DNA of 64,000 nt from Macrostomum lignano. Lineage: Eukaryota. Below are positions 10,901 to 42,200 of the stretch, piece after piece (the stretch's first letter is position 1; every line of letters begins with the position of its first letter). The position numbers and the translations under genes were made by a program. The stretch is taken from positions 42,744 to 106,743 of the forward strand of contig NIVC01002166.1 of NCBI GenBank assembly GCA_002269645.1. The letters run 5' to 3'. The notes under the pieces were generated by a model. The model ran no database searches and was not told the origin of the DNA. It worked only from the letters and a program-made list of their open reading frames with translations.

Positions 10901-11973
10901 AGACGCCAAACAGCCGGGGCCTCTGATATCGAATGTCAGACTGGCCCAGTTGAGTATAAATTAGCCATTGCCCGATGAAAATCGCAGGCAGGCTGTTGTG
11001 CGCAGCTTCCTGTTATTTCTGCTCGATGCTTTCAGGTGCAAATAATTGTAAGCCATAAAAGCGGAGGATTTACGCTGCTTTTAGCTGATGGGGACGGACC
11101 GGCATCCTTCATCATGCTTGCTTGGGATCGAGTGGAGTTGTGGGTGCCCGGGTTTGCAGATCAAACGAGTGGCAGCCCACATCTCCTTAATTGAGTTATC
11201 AACACGGCTGCCCCTGTGCTCAGATATCGCCGATTTGCAATAAATATCCCATATCCCCATTTTTTGCTTCTCCTCCCATGGGGTCCCGGCCGGTTTCAGA
11301 CCCCCCAGTAAAAGGCTTGTAGGGGAATGATGACGAGAGGCGTCAAATAAAGATGCTAACAAAATCGGCAGATCAGCAGACAGCTCAGAGCTAATTATTC
11401 GTTCCGGTCAAGCGCGGGTTGTTAAAGTGCGCCCAAATGCAGCAGAGGCTGAATCAATATTTCAAGTTTGCACTAATTTATTTTTGGCCCGCTTGCGTGT
11501 TTGCCATCGCCTGCCTGCTACAGTCAGCATTGCTATTATTACCATGATGACTCAAGCCCGATTGCTGCGGAGTCCGGGCTTGAGCACGTGTGTGGGCGGC
11601 TGCTCTCGGTTGCTGGGAGACCGACAGTAGAGAAAGGAAACTAGCAACGTCGCTGACAATACCATCCGGTTGCTACGAGAGTTTCAAACTCCTATGAAGA
11701 GACGAAGAGCCACTGTGTCTCGTAAAGTGGCGATCGATACCGGATCCGGAATGGTAAAGATTCTATTTTAATCATAGATTCATAGACCAGGAAGTTCAAC
11801 CATAGACAATCAATCCTGGCGCTGGAGAGGAGATTGCAACTGAAAGCTACGAGTATAATAGTTGCCACTATAAAAAAACAAAAAAATGAATTTCTTTCAC
11901 CTTAGACCTAAAGGTGATTTTGCCATAGAAAAAATCAATTCTGTTCGCTTGATCGTGAAAGACTGATCAATTG

Positions 11974-12205
11974 ACGTATTCTCACCGATTGGGGCTACGT
12001 AAATTAAAATTGCTACTCAACTCCAACCTGAGCACCGCACTTACAAGGGGGGCTTCAGGACGCACCCACACAAGGCTTCACCAGAGTCTGGACGCAGTGG
12101 TACAGCCTGGGGCTGGCACACATTGGCCGGTACGCCTCGGTAAGCTCTGGCGGGTCTTAATTCGATTGCTCTAGATTGAGTTAAGTAAGAGACCGTCTTT
12201 CCGGC
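11974..12205 (-). ncRNA. Candidate spliced-leader-related snRNA-like gene
   Basis: Begins GCCGGAAAGACGGTCTCTTACT-TAACTCAATCTAGAGCA, near-identical to the Macrostomum SL 5' half as recalled; U-rich Sm-like site AATTTTAATTT (12011-12001) between two short hairpins; no AUG|GU donor. Confidence 0.5.
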
Positions 12206-12894
12206 TAGCAAGGAGAGAAAATCAAGACGTGAACACGACACCACACCCCAACACACGGCGTCAGTAATTAAATATCTACGGCCCGCGGAGGGGGAGGCCA
12301 ACAGCCCTCCAACCCACCACCCCATCGATCCCAACCCGCGCCAGCCAACCACACCGCCAGGGGGGGAGGAAACACCGATCCCCCCGCCGCTCGGCCCAGC
12401 CAATCAGAACGCAGTAAGCAACAAATAGTACAGAAGCTGAACGATAAGTCATAGTAAAAAAACGCCCGGCTTGAACCAATTGATGCATGTGGGGACAAAC
12501 TGAGTCAACCTGGCACTGAAACAAAAGTGCATGCAGAAAACAACAGTAATAAAAGTATTGAGTGCAAGTTTCACTAATAGATCGATAAAATTGACTCTTA
12601 GTCACTCAGAAGTTAGCAATGGAAAATCTTTTTTAAAATGAACATTACTACGCCTTTACACTTTCATTAAGCCTGGAGACGAAAAAAGCTTTAATGTTTC
12701 AAGCAATTTAGCCAGCCCATCTTGGTCTGGGGGATAGATTGGCATTGTACGTATTGAGGCAATGCTGCCAGTGTTTGTACTACAGCCGGGTAGGGACCGA
12801 GAGAGTTTCCAATTGGTGAAAAGGTGCCTTCGCAACCAACGCCCTTGAAGCTAATTTTTTGTTTGCTACGTCAATCAGGGCCAAAGCCAGTGGG

Positions 12895-18124: not shown

Positions 18125-18185
<61 letters not shown>

Positions 18186-18190
18186 CACAC

Positions 18191-18228
<38 letters not shown>

Positions 18229-21200
18229 GGACAGACAGACGGCAGCTCACCAGAGTCACAGCCGCATTCCGATGCCCCTTGGCGGCGGCATAGTGCAGCG
18301 GAGTCCGGCCCACCGAGTCCAGGGCATTGGGATCGGCGCCCTTGCCTAGCAGATATTCGACGCACTCAACGCGCCCACCAACGGCGGCCGCATGCAGGCA
18401 AGTTCGGCCGAATGCGTCAAGCCGGCCGATGGCCAGCGGCTGGGCCAGCGTGAGCCGCTGGACGCAGTCAAAATAGCCGGACAGGCAGGCAAGATGCAGC
18501 GGCGTGAGCTGGCTGGGCCCGACTGGCCGGTCAGGCGAGGCGCCGGCCTTCATCATCACGTCAAGGAAGAGGTCGTGGCCTCGCATCGCGGCGACGCTGA
18601 GCGGAGTGTAGCCGGAGGCATCGACAGAGTCGGGCACGGCGCCGGCGGCCAGCAGCGACTGGGCGCGAGTGAACCGGCCGTGAACAGCGGCCATGTGAAG
18701 TGGAGTGCGGCCCTCCAGGCAGACCGCGTTCACGTTGGCATCCTCGTGAATTAGCCAGTCTAGGCACTGAGCGCTGTGCGTGCCTGCAATGTAATGATTT
18801 GAAATGAAGGTGAGAAGGTGCTTCTTCTCAGGGTTGAACATACACTTAAGGGGGGTGGTCGGTGTTGCATGTACTCTAGGGAGGCTGGGTGGTCGGTGTC
18901 GCATGTACTCTAGGGAGGCTGGGTGGTCGGTGTTGCATGTACTCTAGGGAGGCTGGGTGGTCGGTGTTGCATGTACTCTAGGGAGAGGCTGAGGTGGTCG
19001 GTGTTGCATATACTCTAGGGAGAGGCTGGGTGGTCGGTGTCGCATGTACTCTAGGGGGAGGCTGGGTGGTCGGTGTTGCATGTACTCTAGGGAGAGGCTG
19101 GGTGGTCGGTGTTGCATGTACTCTAGGGAGGCTGGGTGGTCGGTGTTGCATGTACTCTAGGGAGAGGCTGGGTGGTCGGTGTTGCATGTACTCTAGGGAG
19201 AGGCTGGGTGGTCGGTGTTGCATGTACTCTAGGGAGAGGCTGGGTGGTCGGTGTTGCCTGTACTCTAGGGAGAGGCTGGGTGGTCGGTGTTGCATGTACT
19301 CTAGGGAGAGGCTGGGTGGTCGGTGTTGCATGTACTCTAGGGAGAGGCTGAGGTGGTCGGTGTTGCATATACTCTAGGGAGAGGCTGGGTGGCGGGTGTC
19401 GAATGTACTCTAAGGGAGGCTGGGTGGCGGGTGTCGCATGTACTTTAAGGGAGGCTGGGCAAAGGCCGCAGCACGCACCCGCAGCGGCCAGATGAATGGC
19501 AGTCTGTCCCAGCTGGTTCTGAGCCTCCAGCTCCACCCCGGCCAGCTCGGAGCACAGCTGGTCGTTGCCATTGAGGCAGGCCACGTGCAGCGGCGTGTTG
19601 CCCTGCAGGGTGGCCGCGTTGACGTCGGCACCCAGGTCGACCAGCTTGCGCGCGGCGAAGATATTGCCGCAGGCGGCGGCCGTGTGCAGCGGAGTGAAGG
19701 CCTGCTTATCGCGAGCGTTGATCTCAGCGCCGTGGCGGACCAGCAGGTCGATGAGATCCACGCTGCCGTTGTAGGCGGCCCAGTGCAGGGCGCGCCGGTC
19801 GCGCTTGTCGAATGCGTTGACCATGTCCGGCGAGCGGGACAGCAGAAGCTCGGCCACTTCCGGGTGGCCGTTGAATGCGGCATGGTGCAGCGCCGTGTGG
19901 CCAGCCCGATCGCTGACGTTCGGATTAGTCAGATGAGGCAATAGAAGCTGGGCGCACTCAACCGCATTGTTGGCGGCGGCCACGTGCAGCGGGGTCTGCC
20001 AGTTGCGATCGCGGCATTGGACCTCGGCCTGGGCATTGGGAAGGCATTGGGGCGGCTAAGAGGTTGTCTATGGGCTAAGCTGTGCGGCCTCGGCTGCGAT
20101 CGATAGTTACTTGGACTCGCTTATGAGTGATTTATGATCCTTTTTAAAACACTTTTGCCTAAATTTATGAGCGTAATTGTAGTTGTTTGGCATCATTTAT
20201 AAGCGGTTTCCGAGTGGTTAAGCTATATTTATGAGCGATTCATAAGTTTCAGCATCATGTATGAGTGATTTTTATTGTATTTTGCCTAGTTTATGGGCGC
20301 TTTCTAGCGGTTATTTCTCATTCGTTAGCGTTTATTAAATTTTTCATTGATGGTCTTATTGGCGAGCAATGAATGGCTCAACTGCTTCAGGTCTCATTGG
20401 TGAGCTATGGCTAAACTGCTTCAGGTCTCATTGTGATGAATGGCTCAACTGCTTCAGTTCTCATTGGTGAGCAATGGCTCAACTGCTTCAGGTCTCATTG
20501 TGATGAATGGCTCAACTGCTTCAGGTCTCATTGGTGAGCAATGGCTCAACTGCTTCAGGTCTCATTGTGATGAATGGCTCAACTGCTTCAGGTCTCATTG
20601 TGATGAATGGCTCAACTGCTTCAGGTCTCATTGGTGAGCAATGGCTCAACTGCTTCAGGTCTCATTGTGATGAATGGCTCAACTGCTTCAGGTCTCATTG
20701 TGATGAATAGCTCAACTGCTTCAGGTCTCATTGATGAGCAATGGCTCAACTGCTTCAGGTCTCATTGGTGAGCAATGGCTCAACTGCTTCAGGTCTCATT
20801 GTGATGAATGGCTCAACTGCTTCAGGTCTCATTGTGATGAATGGCTCAACTGCTTCAGGTCTCATTGGTGAGCAATGGCTAAACTGCTTCAGGTCTCATT
20901 GGTGAGCAATGGCTCAACTGCTTCAGGTCTCATTGTGATGAATGGCTCAACTGCTTCAGTTCTCATTGTGATGAATGGCTCAACTGCTTCAGGTCTCATT
21001 GGTGAGCAATGGCTCAACTGCTTCAGGTCTCATTGTGATGAATGGCTCAACTGCTTCAGGTCTCATTGTGATGAATGGCTCAACTGCTTCAGGTCTCATT
21101 GGTGAGCAATGGCTCAACTGCTTCAGGTCTCATTGTGATGAATGGCTCAACTGCTTCAGGTCTCATTGGTGAGCAATGGCTCAACTGCTTCAGGTCTCAT

Positions 21201-23590: not shown

Positions 23591-24167
23591 AAGCTCATTC
23601 TTGTTGTTTTATCTTTGGCTGAGACTGCAAGACGTTTAATTAATTCCGACACTTCAGTCAGACTGGGGCTTGGCATGGCTGCACTTAAACTGGTGCACTT
23701 CGACACCCTACCTCTGCCGTGCCCAGTTTTCTCTCCCTACTATCACTGTGTACCCCATCCCTCGTCTCTTGTCTGCGATTGGCTGAGCCAGGGTAGTGTG
23801 AAAGTCTTACGCCTGACCTTGGTCAGCCCTCTTGTCTTCTCCACCCCTCCCCAGCCTTTTCTTTACCCCACGCGTCGCGCTCAGCCCTAGCCCCGCAGGC
23901 GGCGTCCAGTGATTGGCTGTTGTCTCTGTCTCTCTCCCTTTCTCGCTCTACCTCCCCCTTATTTAAAAATTGCGGCTCAGCCAATCACAGACAGTGACGG
24001 GGGATGGGGTACACAGTGATATTAGGGAGAAAACTGGGCATGGCAGAGGGGGTGTCGAAGGGAACCAGTTTAAGTGAAGCTATGCCAAGCCTCAGTCTGA
24101 CTGAAGTGTCGAAATTGATTAAACATCTTGTAGTCCCAGCCATAGATAAAGCAACAGGAATAAGCTT
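23591..24167. mobile_element. Foldback/MITE-like element: ~200-bp inverted arms (23591-23789 and 23974-24167) around a ~185-bp spacer
   Basis: Arms are reverse complements with scattered substitutions and small indels, e.g. CTTCAGTCAGACTG / CAGTCTGACTGAAG and TATCACTGTGTACCCCATCC / GGATGGGGTACACAGTGATA. Confidence 0.75.
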
Positions 24168-35700: not shown

Positions 35701-37919
35701 GCCGATTGGACAAATCGATTCAAACATGGAAGGACGCATACATGCATGGCCCCAGCCAAGGTAAGTCGCAAAAATGCCCACAAAATAGACATAGTACTAA
35801 TTAGATGACGACGTATTTAGGTCAAACAATACAGTGATAGTTACTCCTGTCGTTTACCCAAAATTACGTTAATTTTTACTTAGAATTTCTTTCATAGGTA
35901 AGTCGCATTTTTGGTCAAAACGTAAGTCGCACGACCAGTGTAAATCAGAGGGGTTGCACATGTATGGAAGGACGAATGATGTAGAAGTGCTGGGAGGCAG
36001 CCTACAAGTCACAGAGACAGTGATATCTCTAATCGATTTCTATACTTTAAGGAAAGCAAGAAAAATGGCTCACATCCGTCACAGAGAAGCCCAATTCTTG
36101 TCGAATGTCGCGCACCTCGCGCCAAGCGTTTAGCAAATCGATGAGCAGAGAGTAATGAGCCGCCTCTTCGCGTATCTTGCTGTGCCGCGTGGTCGACAGC
36201 TCGGCTCTGAATAAAGGTTTTTTCAGCGACTTTATTAGCAATATTAAGGTGATCTTATGAGCAAAATTTGGGCGATTCTTATGAGCAGAAAAAAGGACTA
36301 TTCCATGAGCAGGATTAGAGCGATTCTATGAGCAAGATTGAAGCATTTCTATGAGCAGGATTGGGGCGATTCCATGAGCAGGATTGGAGCGATTCTTGTG
36401 AGCAGAATTAGGACTATTCCATGAACAGGATTAGAGCGATTCTATGAGCAAGATTGGGGCGATTCTATGAACAGGATTCGGGCGATTCTATGAGCAAGAT
36501 TGGGGCGATTCCATGAGCAGGATTGGGGCGATTCTATGAGCAGGATTGGAGCTATTCCATGAGCAGGATTGGAGCGATTCTATGAGCAGGATTGGGGCCA
36601 TTCTATGAGCAGGATTGGGGCGATTCTATGAGCAGGATTGGAGCTATTCTTGTGAGCAGAATTAGGACTATTCCATGAACAGGATTAGAGCGATTCTATG
36701 AGCAAGATTGGGGCGATTCTATGAACAGGATTCGGGCGATTCTATGAGCAAGATTGGGGCGATTCCATGAGCAGGATTGGGGCCATTCTATGAGCAGGAT
36801 TGGGGCGATTCTATGAGCAGGATTGGAGCTATTCCATGAGCAGGATTGGAGCGATTCTATGAGCAAGATTGGGGCGATTCCATGAGCAGGATTGGGGCCA
36901 TTCTATGAGCAGGATTGGGGCGATTCTATGAGCAGGATTGGAGCTATTCCATGAGCAGGATTGGAGCGATTCTATGAGCAAGATTGGGGCGATTCCATGA
37001 GCAGGATTGGGGCCATTCTTTGAGCAGGATTGGGGCGATTCTATGAGCAGGATTGGAGCTATTCCATGAGCAGGATTGGGGCGATTCTATGAGCAGGATT
37101 GGAGCGATTCTATGAGCAGAATTGGAGCGACTCTATGAGCAGGATTGGAGCTATTCCATGAGCAGGATTGGGGCGATTCTATGAGCAGGACTAGGACTAT
37201 TCTACTATGAGCAGGATAAGGACTATTCCATGAGCAGGATTAGAACTATTCTATGAGCAGGATTGGGTCAATTCTTTGAGCAGGATTAGGGCGATTCTAT
37301 GAGCAGGATTGGGGTAGAGTACAAGGACATATTTTTACTAATCTGGCAAAAATCCCACCTATAAGCGTCCACTCGGTTCCGATAGTCCTGCAGGACCAGC
37401 TCGTTTTTATTCTGACTCCGCTCCAGCCGGGCCGCCTCCTGCGTCAGCTTGGCGATCTCCCGGCGCAGCGCCGCAATTCTGTCCCGGAAATAAGCCGGAA
37501 AGTTGGACTTCTCGCTGCGAGCGTAGCGCCTGTGCAGCTGGCGGAGCCGGCTGACGGCCGCGTGCTCCCTGGTGAACAGCGGGTGCGCCAGGAACTGAAC
37601 CCCGCCGATGTCCACCTCCAGCTGCCAGGGCGTCTCGCGCTCCAGGCTGGCGAAAGGCGAATCCCAGCGGCGGGCCGGCCGGAACTCGGAGCGGGCCAGC
37701 TGGCGCAGGCGGAGTTGCTCCTGATGCTGCTGCTGCGCCTGGACGCCTTGCACATCGTCATCATCGTCTGGCACCAGCGGCCGCATCGGCACGTCTTTCA
37801 ACGGGTCTGGCAGCATGCGGAGCCGGCCGTCTTCGCCCAGCCAGCCCTGCAGAGCAGAGTGGATGCGCTTACTGAGTCAGGCGGATCAGACAGACAGACA
37901 CACAGACAGACAGATAGAA

Positions 37920-37967
<48 letters not shown>

Positions 37968-38029
37968 TGACTGACAGACAGACACTAAGACAGACAGACA
38001 GACAGACAGACACACAGACAGACAGACAC

Positions 38030-38063
<34 letters not shown>

Positions 38064-38078
38064 TGACTGACAGACACC

Positions 38079-38110
<32 letters not shown>

Positions 38111-38130
38111 TACAGACTGACAGACACACC

Positions 38131-38176
<46 letters not shown>

Positions 38177-38202
38177 TAGACAGACAGACAGACAGACACA
38201 CC

Positions 38203-38233
<31 letters not shown>

Positions 38234-38379
38234 GGACAGACAGACAGGCAAACAGACAGACAGGCAAACAGACAGACAGACAGAAAGACACAACGACAGA
38301 CAGACAGACGGACAGACAGACAGGCAAACAGACAGACAGACAAACAAACAGACAGACAGACAGACACACCGACAGACAG

Positions 38380-38417
<38 letters not shown>

Positions 38418-38490
38418 GGACAGACAGACAGACGGACAGACAGACAGACAGACAGAAGGACAGACAGACAGAAGGACAGACAGACAGAAG

Positions 38491-38521
<31 letters not shown>

Positions 38522-38559
38522 GGACAGACAGACAGACAGACGGACAGACAGACAGGCAA

Positions 38560-38602
<43 letters not shown>

Positions 38603-38898
38603 CACCGACAGACAGACAGACAGACGGACAGACAGACGGACAGACAGACAGGCAAACAGACAGACAGACAGACAGACACAACGACAGACAGACAGACGGA
38701 CAGACAGACAGGCAAACAGACAGACAGGCAAACAGACAGACAGACAGACAGACACAACGACAGACAGACAGACGGACAGACAGACAGGCAAACAGACAGA
38801 CAAACAAACAGACAGACAGACAGACACACCGACAGACAGACAGACAGACAGACAGACGGACAGACAGACAGACAGACAGAAGGACAGACAGACAGAAG

Positions 38899-38945
<47 letters not shown>

Positions 38946-38979
38946 GGACAGACAGACAGACGGACAGACAGACAGGCAA

Positions 38980-39018
<39 letters not shown>

Positions 39019-39095
39019 CACCGACAGACAGACAGACAGACGGACAGACAGACAGGCAAACAGACAGACAGACAGACACAACGACAGACAGACAG

Positions 39096-39169
<74 letters not shown>

Positions 39170-39202
39170 GGACGGACAGACAGACAGACAGACAGACAGA
39201 AG

Positions 39203-39241
<39 letters not shown>

Positions 39242-39251
39242 GGACAGGCAA

Positions 39252-39293
<42 letters not shown>

Positions 39294-42200
39294 GGACAGA
39301 CAAACAGATACTAAGACAGACAGACAAACATAAAAATCAATCAGACCAACCTTCTTAGACTCGTACACATCAGCCTTCATAGTCAGTATGCTCTGCAATC
39401 GCAGCACGTTGCCCTCGGTGACCCGGGGCCTGCGGCCAACGTAGAGTCCCTCCTCGGCCAGATTAACTGGATGCTCCACAGAAACCGGCGTGGCTGAATG
39501 AGCAAAATGGATGCCGAACGGGTTAAAAAGCAGTCAGTTGGCGCAATAAAAAGCCCCGGCAAAAGACCTACCGCTAGCAGCAGACGGATAATAGTACAGC
39601 TTGCTCTCATCCGCTTTAGCCAGGAACACCGCCCTGTGCAGGTAGACTTTCTCGCCTTCGTACACGTAGACCTCATCGTCTGCGCCAGCCTGAGGCTGAG
39701 CAGCTGCCGGCGCCGCCGCAGTCCCGTCCGCCGCGGTCAATTCGTCGGGCTCCCAGACGGAGTTGGCAAAGAAGCTGACCTGCTCGTCCTCGGTGAGCTC
39801 TTTCTTCTCGCGCAGAGCCTCCCAGGACATCTGGCGAATTTGATTGGCCAAGAAGCATGCAGATTGGTTTGAAGCTTAAAAGTTAATTTTCAGTGTTAGC
39901 GCATAAGCTTGTTAAGTTGCAGACAGAATCAGCTGTTCCTGCTAAATTATATGCTATCTCCTTGGTAACGATGGCTTAACCTATAAGCCATTGACTACCC
40001 CTTCAGATTCTTCAGCAGGCCCTTGACTACCCCTCCGATTCTTCAGTAGGCCCTTGACTACCCCTCCGATTCTTCAGTAGGCCCTTGACTACCCCTCCGA
40101 TTCTTCAGTAGGCCCTTGACTACCCCTTTAGATTCTTCAGTAGGCCCTTGACTACCCCTTTAAATTCTTCAGTAGGCCCTTGGCAACCCCTCCGATTCTT
40201 CAGTAGGCCCTTGGCTACCCCCTCAGATTTTTCAGTAGACCCTGAGCTACCCCCTCAGATTTTTCAGTAGACCCTTGGCTACCCCTCCGATTCTTCAGTA
40301 GGCCCTTGGCTACCCCCTCAGATTTTTCAGTAGACCCTGAGCTACCCCCTCAGATTTTTCAGTAGACCCTTGGCTACCCCTCCGATTCTTCAGTAGGCCC
40401 TTGGCTACACCCTCAGATTTTTCAGTAGACCCTTGGCTACCCCTCCGATTCTTCAGTAGGCCCTTGGCAACCCCTCCGATTCTTCAGTAGGCCCTTGGCT
40501 ACCCCCTCAGATTTTTCAGTAGACCCTTGGCTACACCCTCAGATTCTTCAGTAGGCCCTTGGCAACCCCTCCGATTCTTCAGTAGGCCCTTGGCTACCCC
40601 CTCAGATTTTTCAGTAGACCCTTGGCTACACCCTCAGATTCTTCAGTAGGCCCTTGGCTACCCCTCCGATTCTTCAGTAGGCCCTTGGCTACACCCTCAG
40701 ATTTTTCAGTAGACCCTTGGCTACCCCTCCGATTCTTCAGTAGGCCCTTGGCAACCCCTCCGATTCTTCAGTAGGCCCTTGGCTACCCCCTCAGATTTTT
40801 CAGTAGACCCTTGGCTACACCCTCAGATTCTTCAGTAGGCCCTTGGCAACCCCTCCGATTCTTCAGTAGGCCCTTGGCTACCCCTCCGATTCTTCAGTAG
40901 GCCCTTGACTACCTCTTGAGTATTTACTTAGGCACTTTCTACTTAGGCACCAATACCGAGAAAATCACAGCACCAAAAATGGCAAATTTAGGTCTAACAA
41001 ACAAAAATTATTCATGAAACAGCAATTATTGGAAATCATATCTTTAACGCCTATTGGTAGGTAAGGTCGTTAGAAAATAAAATTATGTAAATAATTAATC
41101 AATACTAATTATGATTTTTACGGTAATTGTTGAATTAGTTAACTGAAAAATACCAATAAAGGACTCTTAAATGATTAGTAGAAACACACGGAACTTACCA
41201 GAATAATTAAAAGAAATGAGAGCTAATTTCAGTAAAAGCATTTTATAGTTTACCTTAGTCATCTTTGCCATCCGTTCGGTCCTGCTTCGTATAAGCTCCT
41301 GCGCAATTCGCCAATAAATAAATTTAAGTTACTGACAACAACAAGAAGCACGTGATAGATAGATAAATTAAAAATAATGATAAGATTCATGACATGCATT
41401 TAAACTACTCGTAAGTAGAAAGGAGTGCAATCTCTGTAGTTTGATTCTGTTCTTAAGCTAAATAATAATAACAATAATAATAACAATTGATTACACCTGT
41501 CCCAATTGGGTCGGATGTGCAACCGACAGCTCAGCCGCAGCTATTGCGCGGCGCATCTGAAGGCTGCTCACGGCTGTTCAGTCCAAGGACTGGGGGGTCG
41601 CCACACACATCCTCAATTACCCCAGCTAATGCCGGCACCCATTTTACAGCTGGGTGAACTGAAGCAATCCAGAGTTAAGTGTCTTACTCAAGGACACAAA
41701 CTGCTCCAGTGGGATCGGGAATCGAACCCCCAACCTTCAAGTCGTGAGCCCGACGCTCTAACCACTAGGCTACAACCCCCTAGTAAAAAAGACCTTAGAA
41801 ACGAGAAAAAATAGTAGTGCAAACACGAAAGTGAAAATAAAAGCAAAAAAATCAAGAAAAACAAAACAATTATAAAATGTAATACACGAATTGATTAAGC
41901 TAATTCATGACATAACATCTACACAGACGTAAAGCATATAGTATTATTCCGTATATTTATAATATATAAGCTAACTATAAGCCAAACCTTTGCCACCAGA
42001 GTTGGCAGCCTTGACGCCCGGTAGGTCAGCAGTTCTGCATCCTCCAGGCCGGATTCAAGCTAAGATATAAACAGATATTATTTGAACAGTCTATAGATCA
42101 ATTTGGACGCGTGGGACTAAGCATCTTGGGGAGGACTCATAGCTTCTGACCTTCAATGCAACCTAAGTAATAAACAATACCTATAGCAAATATATGGATC

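What the first reader, a model, noticed from the sequence alone, without database searches (positions are those of the whole stretch)
11974..12205. Spliced-leader-like snRNA candidate: SL 5' half, no splice donor, hairpin-flanked Sm-like site
Seen: the minus strand from 12205 reads GCCGGAAAGACGGTCTCTTACTTAACTCAATCTAGAGCAATCG. Recalled, not verified here: the Macrostomum lignano SL is CCGTAAAGACGGTCTCTTACTGCGAAGACTCAATTTATTGCATG, which would give 20/21 identity over stem-loop I plus a shared ACTCAAT..GCA. The terminal AUG|GU donor that defines a working flatworm SL RNA is absent. About 190 nt later there is a GCTCA/TGAGT hairpin, a U-rich site AATTTTAATTT and an ACGTA/TACGT hairpin, the layout of an Sm snRNA 3' end. 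Upstream is a GC-rich segment with a CCAAT motif. Inference: a non-donor, SL-derived snRNA (conceptually like nematode SmY RNAs, which assist trans-splicing), a divergent SL variant, or an SL-headed mobile element.
Basis: partly seen in the sequence, partly recalled or inferred. Interest (0 to 1): 0.8.

Follow-up and report, generated by a model that had tools for sequence, protein, structure and literature searches.

The report
Degenerate spliced-leader RNA gene copy
This is a lone, badly decayed copy of the flatworm spliced-leader RNA gene: its first 22 bases are intact, but it has lost the start codon, splice site and protein-binding site a working copy needs, so it is most likely an ordinary pseudogene.

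Summary
The minus strand from 12205 matches the published Macrostomum spliced leader (SL) at 21 of 22 bases, starting at the SL's first base; no shuffle of the window gives such a match. I recovered two canonical macrostomid SL RNA genes from public contigs. Homology to them runs about 56 nt, past the exon into the intron (TAAGAC-CCG). At the canonical positions, AUG is now AUCG and the GU donor is UU. Stem-loop II is gone and the Sm site UAUUUUUAG reads CAAUGUGUG. A covariance model of the canonical gene scores 9.4 bits here against 130-134 bits on real genes.

One is a consensus GTAAGT at 12044. The other is a 21-bp long-range helix pairing the SL head with the sequence just after that GTAAGT.

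The locus is single-copy in the window and absent from the syntenic M. lignano region. The best reading is an orphan SL RNA pseudogene. A functional SL-derived RNA is not excluded (about 0.12). Transcript data and the source genome would decide.

The parts
12184..12205 (-). SL head. It is 21/22 identical to nt 1-22 of the Macrostomum SL, starts at the SL's first base and includes the 5' mini-hairpin GCCG/CGGU.
12150..12205 (-). Stretch homologous to nt 1-56 of the canonical SL RNA gene (exon plus the first 11 nt of the intron). The alignment has 45 matches in 60 columns and several indels.
   Evidence: Local alignment scores 54 against shuffles 23.8 +/- 4.1. Anchored extension past nt 22 has p = 0.02. 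Extension past ACTCAAT has p = 0.025.
12163..12166 (-). Decayed SL-terminal start codon: ATCG in place of ATG.
   Evidence: Alignment
12151..12160 (-). Relic of the canonical 5' splice site and stem I 3' strand: TTAAGAC-CCG in place of GTAAGACACCG. The donor GT is now TT.
12099..12205 (-). Full-length match (model positions 1-106) to the covariance model of the canonical SL RNA gene, but at only 9.4 bits. Stem-loop II is absent and the Sm site is replaced by CAAUGUGUG.
   Evidence: canonical genes score 130-134 bits
12103..12115 (-). Hairpin CAGCC-CCA-GGCTG, in register with canonical stem-loop III (CAGCCC...GGGCT).
   Evidence: CM alignment; pair probability 0.88
12167..12188 (-). 5' arm of a long-range helix or inverted repeat (TTACTTAACTCAATCTAGAGCA).
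12013..12034 (-). 3' arm of the long-range helix (TGCTCAGGTTGGAGTTGAGTAG).
   Evidence: Own shuffles 0/500; matched genomic background 7/1500; the same arms as plus-strand RNA give only -16.3 kcal/mol.
12039..12044 (-). Consensus 5' splice-site hexamer GTAAGT, 161 nt after the SL start.
12001..12011 (-). It lacks the G of RAU(n)GR and of the canonical AUUUUUAG.
11967..12007 (-). Terminal hairpin that includes ACGTA/TACGT.
   Evidence: Pair probabilities 0.93-0.99
11868..11890 (-). Polypyrimidine tract followed by TAG. With GTAAGT at 12044 it could bound a 177-nt cis intron.
   Evidence: Read directly from the sequence; no transcript evidence

Best explanation
The locus is a solitary, degenerate copy of the Macrostomum spliced-leader RNA gene: an SL RNA pseudogene or relic. 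It lies in an intergenic stretch about 3 kb downstream of an ankyrin-repeat gene in a macrostomid flatworm genome.

Shown:
- It derives from the SL RNA gene or its primary transcript, not from a spliced mRNA, because the homology crosses the exon/intron boundary.
- The elements a working SL RNA needs are lost at their canonical positions: the terminal AUG, the GU donor, stem-loop II and the Sm site.

Inferred:
- It arose by duplication or retroposition of an SL RNA gene and then decayed.
- It no longer donates a leader.
- A local rearrangement explains why changes cluster after nt 22 and why the head pairs with sequence 132 nt downstream. Candidates are an inverted micro-duplication, quasi-palindrome-templated mutation or a small TA-flanked insertion.
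- The downstream GTAAGT, U-rich tract and hairpins are not homologous to the SL RNA 3' half.
For: - The head matches the SL at 21/22 from +1, with no match in shuffles.
- Local alignment to a canonical gene recovered from a metagenome contig (L002) scores 54 against 23.8 +/- 4.1 for shuffles. It covers exon plus TAAGAC-CCG. Extension beyond the exon has p = 0.025.
- A second canonical gene (L010) has different flanks, yet the two genes are 95% identical over 106 columns. The whole functional gene is therefore tightly conserved.
- A covariance model of the two genes scores them 130-134 bits and the candidate 9.4 bits, with stem-loop II missing and the Sm site mutated.
- The first 110 nt do not fold better than shuffles (z = -1.0). 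The canonical gene has z = -3.6.
- There is a single copy in 64 kb.
- The syntenic M. lignano locus (CC2D2A, then the ankyrin gene) has no SL-like head within 10 kb downstream.
- SL RNA loci with a non-conserved donor are already read as pseudogenes in parasitic flatworms (PMC12582326).
Against: - Decay is strongly uneven: 1 differing column in the first 22 against 14 of 38 afterwards (Fisher p = 0.005). This could mean constraint on the head, although counting mutational events rather than columns weakens the contrast.
- The head pairs with the sequence just 3' of a consensus GTAAGT in a 21-bp helix. That helix is rare against matched genomic background (7/1500) and is stronger on this strand because of G.U pairs.
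- The combination of GTAAG, hairpin, U-rich tract and hairpin is rare in the window (defined post hoc).
- No transcript or population data were available to show that the locus is silent.
Confidence: 0.55

Rival explanations
1. The locus encodes a functional SL-derived RNA of about 240 nt. It would be either a non-donor Sm-class RNA, or a variant SL RNA with a 161-nt exon that uses the GTAAGT at 12044. In this reading the conserved 22-nt head supplies the cap-proximal hairpin and perhaps an intragenic promoter element. The long-range helix would play the role of stem I, enclosing the donor, and would be followed by a single-stranded U-rich site and a terminal hairpin.
For: - The head is conserved far better than the rest.
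- The 21-bp head/3' helix has pair probability 0.90-0.97. It is rare against shuffles and matched background and is strand-biased through G.U pairs.
- A consensus GTAAGT sits immediately 5' of the 3' arm.
- The first four bases of AAUUUU are predicted unpaired (0.95-0.99) ahead of a stable terminal hairpin.
- The whole 241 nt folds with z = -2.05.
- From my own knowledge: in Ascaris the 22-nt SL is itself a promoter element (Hannon et al. 1990).
Against: - There is no sequence similarity to the highly conserved canonical 3' half.
- The U-rich site lacks the G of the Sm consensus.
- A 161-nt leader containing a short upstream ORF (ATG at 12123) and no terminal AUG would differ from every known flatworm SL.
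- It is single-copy in the window and absent from the syntenic M. lignano region.
- No promoter motif is shared with the canonical genes.
- There is no expression evidence.
Confidence: 0.12
2. The locus is an SL pseudogene or SL fragment disrupted by, or forming part of, a small mobile element. The segment 12185-12016 would be a roughly 170-nt MITE-like insert with 19-nt terminal inverted repeats and TA target-site duplications.
For: - The inverted arms CTTAACTCAATCTAGAGCA and TGCTCAGGTTGGAGTTGAG are each flanked by TA.
- After conceptual excision, the downstream sequence aligns weakly with the rest of the canonical gene (CAATTT..., CGGTGA, CAATT, GATCAGT.TTT; anchored p = 0.038).
- The genome is repeat-rich.
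Against: - There is no second copy in the window or in any fetched locus.
- The left 'TIR' contains ACTCAAT in register with the SL, which argues that it is SL sequence rather than element sequence.
- DNA-level similarity between the arms is not significant on its own (p = 0.22).
- The termini do not resemble familiar Tc1/mariner ends (my own knowledge).
Confidence: 0.1
3. The locus is the 5' end of a conventional RNA polymerase II transcript, either a lncRNA or an unannotated gene. Its first exon would contain an SL relic and be followed by a 177-nt cis intron running from GTAAGT at 12044 to TAG at 11868. This is not exclusive of the pseudogene reading.
For: - The upstream region is GC-rich with two inverted CCAAT boxes.
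- A consensus donor and a strong polypyrimidine-AG acceptor lie 177 nt apart.
Against: - There is no ORF or Pfam domain downstream.
- No protein homologue was found for the ORF across the exon.
- There is no conservation with M. lignano.
- Both splice signals are short motifs that can occur by chance.
Confidence: 0.1
4. The locus is a relic of a retroposed, SL-trans-spliced mRNA: a processed pseudogene that carries the SL at its 5' end.
For: - Homology starts exactly at SL nt 1.
- There is no shared upstream sequence with the canonical genes.
Against: - Similarity continues past the exon into intron sequence (TAAGAC-CCG, p = 0.025). A stem-loop-III-like hairpin also sits in register.
- There is no poly(A) tract and no convincing target-site duplication.
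- The sequence after the SL has no coding homology.
Confidence: 0.06

Closest known systems
Canonical Macrostomum SL RNA gene (109 bp in M. lignano, PMC8629364; examples recovered here: L002:615-720 and L010:1589-1693)
   Same: - The first 22 nt are the same (21/22) and start at the same base.
- ACTCAAT follows.
- The stem I partner TAAGAC-CCG is present.
- A CAGCC/GGCTG hairpin sits in register with stem-loop III.
- The homologous block is about the same length (107 nt).
   Different: - AUG is now AUCG and the donor GU is now UU.
- Stem-loop II is absent.
- The Sm site UAUUUUUAG reads CAAUGUGUG.
- The covariance-model score is 9.4 bits against 130-134 bits.
- The 110-nt block shows no significant folding.
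SL RNA pseudogenes of parasitic flatworms (loci without a conserved donor in S. bovis, S. haematobium and F. hepatica; PMC12582326)
   Same: - Recognisable SL RNA homology with the splice donor lost.
- A solitary locus outside a functional cluster.
   Different: - This one is in a free-living macrostomid and is far more decayed after nt 22.
- It carries an extra inverted repeat and a downstream GTAAGT.
Nematode SmY RNAs (Rfam RF01844)
   Same: Only the concept of a non-donor small RNA related to SL RNA.
   Different: - There is no Rfam match.
- There is no canonical Sm site.
- The size (about 240 nt) and fold are different.
- There is no evidence of expression or conservation.
snRNA-headed chimeric retrocopies (the U6/L1-type template-switch products of mammals; my own knowledge)
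   Same: A small-RNA sequence that starts exactly at its +1 and is fused to unrelated downstream sequence.
   Different: No poly(A), no target-site duplication and no identifiable parent for the downstream part.

Membership tests
Functional flatworm SL RNA (trans-splicing donor) | Conserved SL exon ending in AUG | tested here: not met
   Only nt 1-22 are conserved (21/22). The 3' half has indels, and AUG is now AUCG at 12166-12163.
Functional flatworm SL RNA (trans-splicing donor) | GU 5' splice site directly after the exon, base-paired with the exon in stem I | tested here: not met
   At the canonical position the sequence is TTAAGAC rather than GTAAGAC. A GTAAGT exists 161 nt from the start, but there is no precedent for such an exon and no data on its use.
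Functional flatworm SL RNA (trans-splicing donor) | Sm-type site between stem-loops II and III | tested here: not met
   The covariance model aligns CAAUGUGUG to UAUUUUUAG, and stem-loop II is absent. The AAUUUUAAUUU at 12011-12001 is not homologous to the canonical site and lacks the G.
Functional flatworm SL RNA (trans-splicing donor) | Three-stem-loop fold of about 100-110 nt | tested here: not met
   z = -1.0 and no canonical fold. The canonical gene gives z = -3.6 and three stem-loops.
Functional flatworm SL RNA (trans-splicing donor) | Expression with a TMG cap and use on mRNAs | not testable with these tools
   No transcript data for the source species could be reached.
SL RNA pseudogene | Significant homology to the SL RNA gene that includes non-exon sequence | tested here: met
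SL RNA pseudogene | Loss of elements essential for function | tested here: met
   AUG, GU, stem-loop II and the Sm site are all lost at their canonical positions.
SL RNA pseudogene | No selective conservation in relatives | tested here: inconclusive
   It is absent from 10 kb downstream of the orthologous ankyrin gene in M. lignano. However, the species are so diverged (55-85% amino-acid identity in exons) that only this one comparison was possible. The uneven decay also leaves constraint on the head open.
SL RNA pseudogene | Not transcribed or not used | not testable with these tools
   No RNA data.
SmY RNA | Match to the SmY model: two stem-loops flanking a consensus Sm site, about 70-90 nt | tested here: not met
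   No Rfam hit at E <= 10. The size and the site differ.
MITE (Tc1/mariner-type) | Terminal inverted repeats with a TA target-site duplication | tested here: inconclusive
   There are 19-22-nt imperfect arms flanked by TA. The arm similarity alone has p = 0.22 at the DNA level.
MITE (Tc1/mariner-type) | Multiple dispersed copies | not testable with these tools
   No other copy in the 64-kb window. The source genome is not available.
Processed pseudogene of a trans-spliced mRNA | Complete SL joined to an mRNA body, with a poly(A) tail and target-site duplication | tested here: not met
   Homology continues into the intron. There is no poly(A) or target-site duplication and no coding homology.

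The most novel reading that the evidence does not exclude
The locus encodes a stable RNA of about 240 nt derived from SL RNA. It would keep the 22-nt SL head, use a 21-bp head/3' helix as an enlarged stem I around a 132-nt insert and a consensus 5' splice site, and end in a U-rich site plus a terminal hairpin. Such an RNA would be either a long-exon SL RNA donating a 161-nt leader or a non-donor RNA that competes for or assists the trans-splicing machinery, a flatworm counterpart of nematode SmY.
Probability: 0.12. Interest if true: 0.75.

Novelty: new member of a known kind. Interest (0 to 1): 0.25.

Why it matters
If it is a pseudogene, the value is mostly practical. Genome annotators and pipelines that seed SL RNA gene searches with the SL should expect degenerate SL-headed loci in Macrostomum, and only loci with AUG|GUAAG, stem-loop II and the UAUUUUUAG site should be called SL RNA genes. 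The two canonical genes recovered here show that the whole 106-nt gene, intron part included, is under tight conservation.

If the minority reading were true, it would be the first SL-derived accessory or variant RNA outside nematodes, and that would bear on how trans-splicing machinery evolves. Existing RNA-seq data and the genome of the source species could test this directly.

Tried and rejected
- Rfam, at gathering thresholds and at E <= 10, finds nothing at the locus. It also fails on a genuine canonical SL RNA gene, so this null result is uninformative.
- Looking for more copies: exact and 3-mismatch searches and short-word BLAST within the window found none. A viral-contig scan found none. 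A scan of bacterial and archaeal genomes returned seven chance 17-mers and one useful contaminant contig, L010.
- Orthologue approach: the syntenic M. lignano locus was fetched, but non-coding DNA does not align between the species and no SL-like head is present. Two further protein searches meant to reach other Macrostomum genomic contigs gave only short Logan contigs or nothing.
- ORF approach: the 72-aa ORF across the candidate has no real homologues among 1.84 billion representative proteins.
- Tandem-dimer or decayed-array idea: I saw a second degenerate head around 12117-12084, a CTTACTGCG 9-mer at 12425-12417, and other SL k-mers downstream. None of this is supported. SL 8-mer density near the locus is at background level, the covariance model finds no second unit, and the alignments give p = 0.1-0.4.
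- Shared promoter motifs between the canonical genes and the candidate: none. The two canonical genes share nothing upstream with each other either.
- Target-site duplication or poly(A) for a retrocopy: only a TTGATTTT 8-mer at -20 and at 11938, which is within chance.

Full report
**1. Checking the observation**

- The 45-nt M. cliftonense SL, GCCGTAAAGACGGTCTCTTACTGCGAAGACTCAATTTATTGCATG, and the M. hystrix SL are in the supplement of PMC10468722.
- The 35-nt M. lignano core and the description of its SL RNA gene are in PMC8629364: 109 bp, donor GTAAG, and an Sm-like site between two hairpins.

The window therefore matches the SL at 21 of 22 positions from the SL's very first base. It is the only hit with 3 or fewer mismatches in the window, and no shuffle gives one. 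ACTCAAT and GCA follow, and the AUG|GU is absent. The upstream 200 nt are 63% GC and carry two inverted CCAAT boxes.

**2. Where the window comes from**

The window is 28% minisatellite. On its minus strand it carries a CC2D2A gene followed by an ankyrin-repeat (PP6-regulatory-type) gene. The same gene order is found on M. lignano contig NIVC01002095.1 (L003), with collinear exon matches at about 55-85% amino-acid identity. Only one exon aligns at the nucleotide level. The source is therefore a macrostomid flatworm well diverged from M. lignano. Its proteins are not in the searched collections.

**3. Canonical genes for comparison**

Pattern scans recovered two genuine canonical SL RNA genes.
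- L002:615-720 lies on a JGI metagenome contig, 1.05 kb upstream of a Na/K-ATPase beta gene.
- L010:1589-1693 lies on a flatworm contig mis-binned into a Flavobacteriaceae MAG.

Their flanks are unrelated, yet the genes are 95% identical over 106 columns. Each consists of the 45-nt SL, then |GTAAGACACCG, stem-loop II (GATCCA...TGGATC), TATTTTTAG, and stem-loop III (CAGCCC...GGGCT). The gene folds into three stem-loops with z = -3.6.

Rfam recognises neither the candidate nor this canonical gene. Its silence on the candidate is therefore uninformative.

**4. What the candidate shares with the canonical gene**

A local alignment covers canonical nt 1-56 and scores 54, against 23.8 +/- 4.1 for shuffles. 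Anchored tests show the homology continues past nt 22 (p = 0.02). It also continues past ACTCAAT, across the exon/intron boundary, into TAAGAC-CCG (p = 0.025). The sequence therefore derives from the gene or its primary RNA, not from a spliced mRNA.

At the canonical positions, ATG is now ATCG and GTAAGAC is now TTAAGAC. A covariance model built from the two canonical genes aligns its full length to 12205-12099 at only 9.4 bits (E about 0.1 in 8 kb). The real genes score 130-134 bits. In that alignment:
- the head and stem I are kept;
- stem-loop II is missing;
- the Sm site reads CAAUGUGUG;
- a CAGCC/GGCUG hairpin sits where stem-loop III should be.

The 110-nt block does not fold better than shuffles.

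**5.

The segment 12044-11974 has no significant similarity to the canonical intron half (p = 0.05-0.4 across scoring schemes), and the covariance model finds nothing there. Folded alone, it is unremarkable (z = -1.1).

- The module begins with a consensus GTAAGT at 12044-12039, the only GTAAG in the feature.
This helix pairs head nt 18-39 (12188-12167) with nt 172-193 (12034-12013), with pair probabilities 0.90-0.97.

The helix has a duplex energy of -25.0 kcal/mol.
- No shuffle of the candidate's own downstream sequence reaches this (0 of 500).
- In non-repeat windows with matched GC content, only 7 of 1500 reach it.
- In unfiltered windows, which include the minisatellites, 12% reach it.

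All three imperfect positions are G.U pairs on this strand. The same arms read as plus-strand RNA give only -16.3 kcal/mol. The arms are flanked by TA on each side.

A post hoc scan found the combination of GTAAG, hairpin, AU4-6R and hairpin at 1 of 102 GTAAG sites and at 1.5% of random positions. Separately, GTAAGT together with the polypyrimidine-TAG at 11890-11868 could simply bound a 177-nt cis intron.

**6. Copy number and conservation**

There is one copy in the window. There is no SL-like head within 10 kb downstream of the orthologous ankyrin gene in M. lignano. No further comparative data could be reached.

**7. Interpretation**

The best-supported reading is an orphan, degenerate SL RNA gene copy. 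This is the same kind of locus that a recent survey of parasitic flatworms calls a possible SL RNA pseudogene when the donor is not conserved (PMC12582326). I give it 0.55.

The main evidence pulling the other way is the uneven decay: 1 of 22 differing columns against 14 of 38 (Fisher p = 0.005). The effect is weaker if indels are counted as single events. The strand-biased long-range helix next to a consensus donor also pulls that way. Both are compatible with neutral routes such as short gene-conversion tracts, an inverted micro-duplication, quasi-palindrome-templated mutation or a small TA-flanked insertion. They also keep a functional SL-derived RNA alive at about 0.12.

The other rivals are a MITE-type insertion (0.10), a conventional first exon and intron (0.10, not exclusive of the pseudogene reading) and a retroposed trans-spliced mRNA (0.06). 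The last is disfavoured by the intron homology and by the lack of a poly(A) tract or target-site duplication.

**8. Novelty and score**

This is a new member of a known kind. It would not surprise a specialist unless the RNA proves to be expressed, so I set interest at 0.25. The decisive tests are a genome-wide copy and orthologue search, comparison with the species' own canonical SL intron, and RNA 5'-end and junction evidence. All are simple, but none was possible with the data reachable here.

Noticed in passing
L010:1589-1693 (JAGQZA010000190.1, 3752 nt): A complete canonical macrostomid SL RNA gene sits on a low-coverage contig binned into a 'Flavobacteriaceae bacterium' MAG (HKST-UBA79). 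The contig is evidently flatworm DNA contaminating a bacterial bin.
   Followed up: partly
L002:615-720 and L002:1774-2922: A JGI metagenome contig (Ga0302322_100095745) carries a canonical SL RNA gene 1.05 kb upstream of an intronless Na/K-ATPase beta-subunit gene. The closest proteins (76-77% identity) are on short Logan contigs.
   Followed up: partly
L001:1-300: This metagenome or metatranscriptome contig begins with the SL (from AGACGG... to ...TTGCATG) joined directly to an mRNA for a CCHC zinc-knuckle protein. It is a trans-spliced flatworm transcript in an environmental data set.
   Followed up: no
window 11868-12044 (-): A consensus GTAAGT and a long polypyrimidine tract ending in TAG lie 177 nt apart. 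This could be a cis intron of an unannotated transcript.
   Followed up: partly
window 12417-12425 (-): The 9-mer CTTACTGCG, identical to SL nt 17-25, lies about 215 nt upstream of the SL-like head. The head itself lacks the GCG of this motif. The occurrence is within chance expectation (about 0.1).
   Followed up: partly
window 1-64000: About 28% of the window consists of minisatellites with 16-95-nt units. Several lie inside or beside exons of the ankyrin gene, for example (AGAC)n at 18125-18240 and a 36-nt repeat at 18853-19459. A 1.4-kb (CAGA)n array lies at 37887-39330.
   Followed up: no
window 15164-37816 (-) and L003: The gene order CC2D2A followed by a PP6-regulatory-type ankyrin-repeat gene is conserved with M. 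lignano NIVC01002095.1 at 55-85% exon amino-acid identity, while intergenic DNA cannot be aligned.
   Followed up: yes
window 41707-41781 (-): A tRNA-Val(CAC) gene is found by both ARAGORN and Rfam (39 bits). The Rfam alignment shows a 3-nt gap in the T arm, so it may be a degenerate or tRNA-derived copy.
   Followed up: no
window 23591-24167: An inverted repeat with 118-nt arms (88% complementary, 341-nt spacer) encloses a second 41-nt inverted pair. It may be a foldback or MITE-like element just upstream of the ankyrin gene.
   Followed up: no
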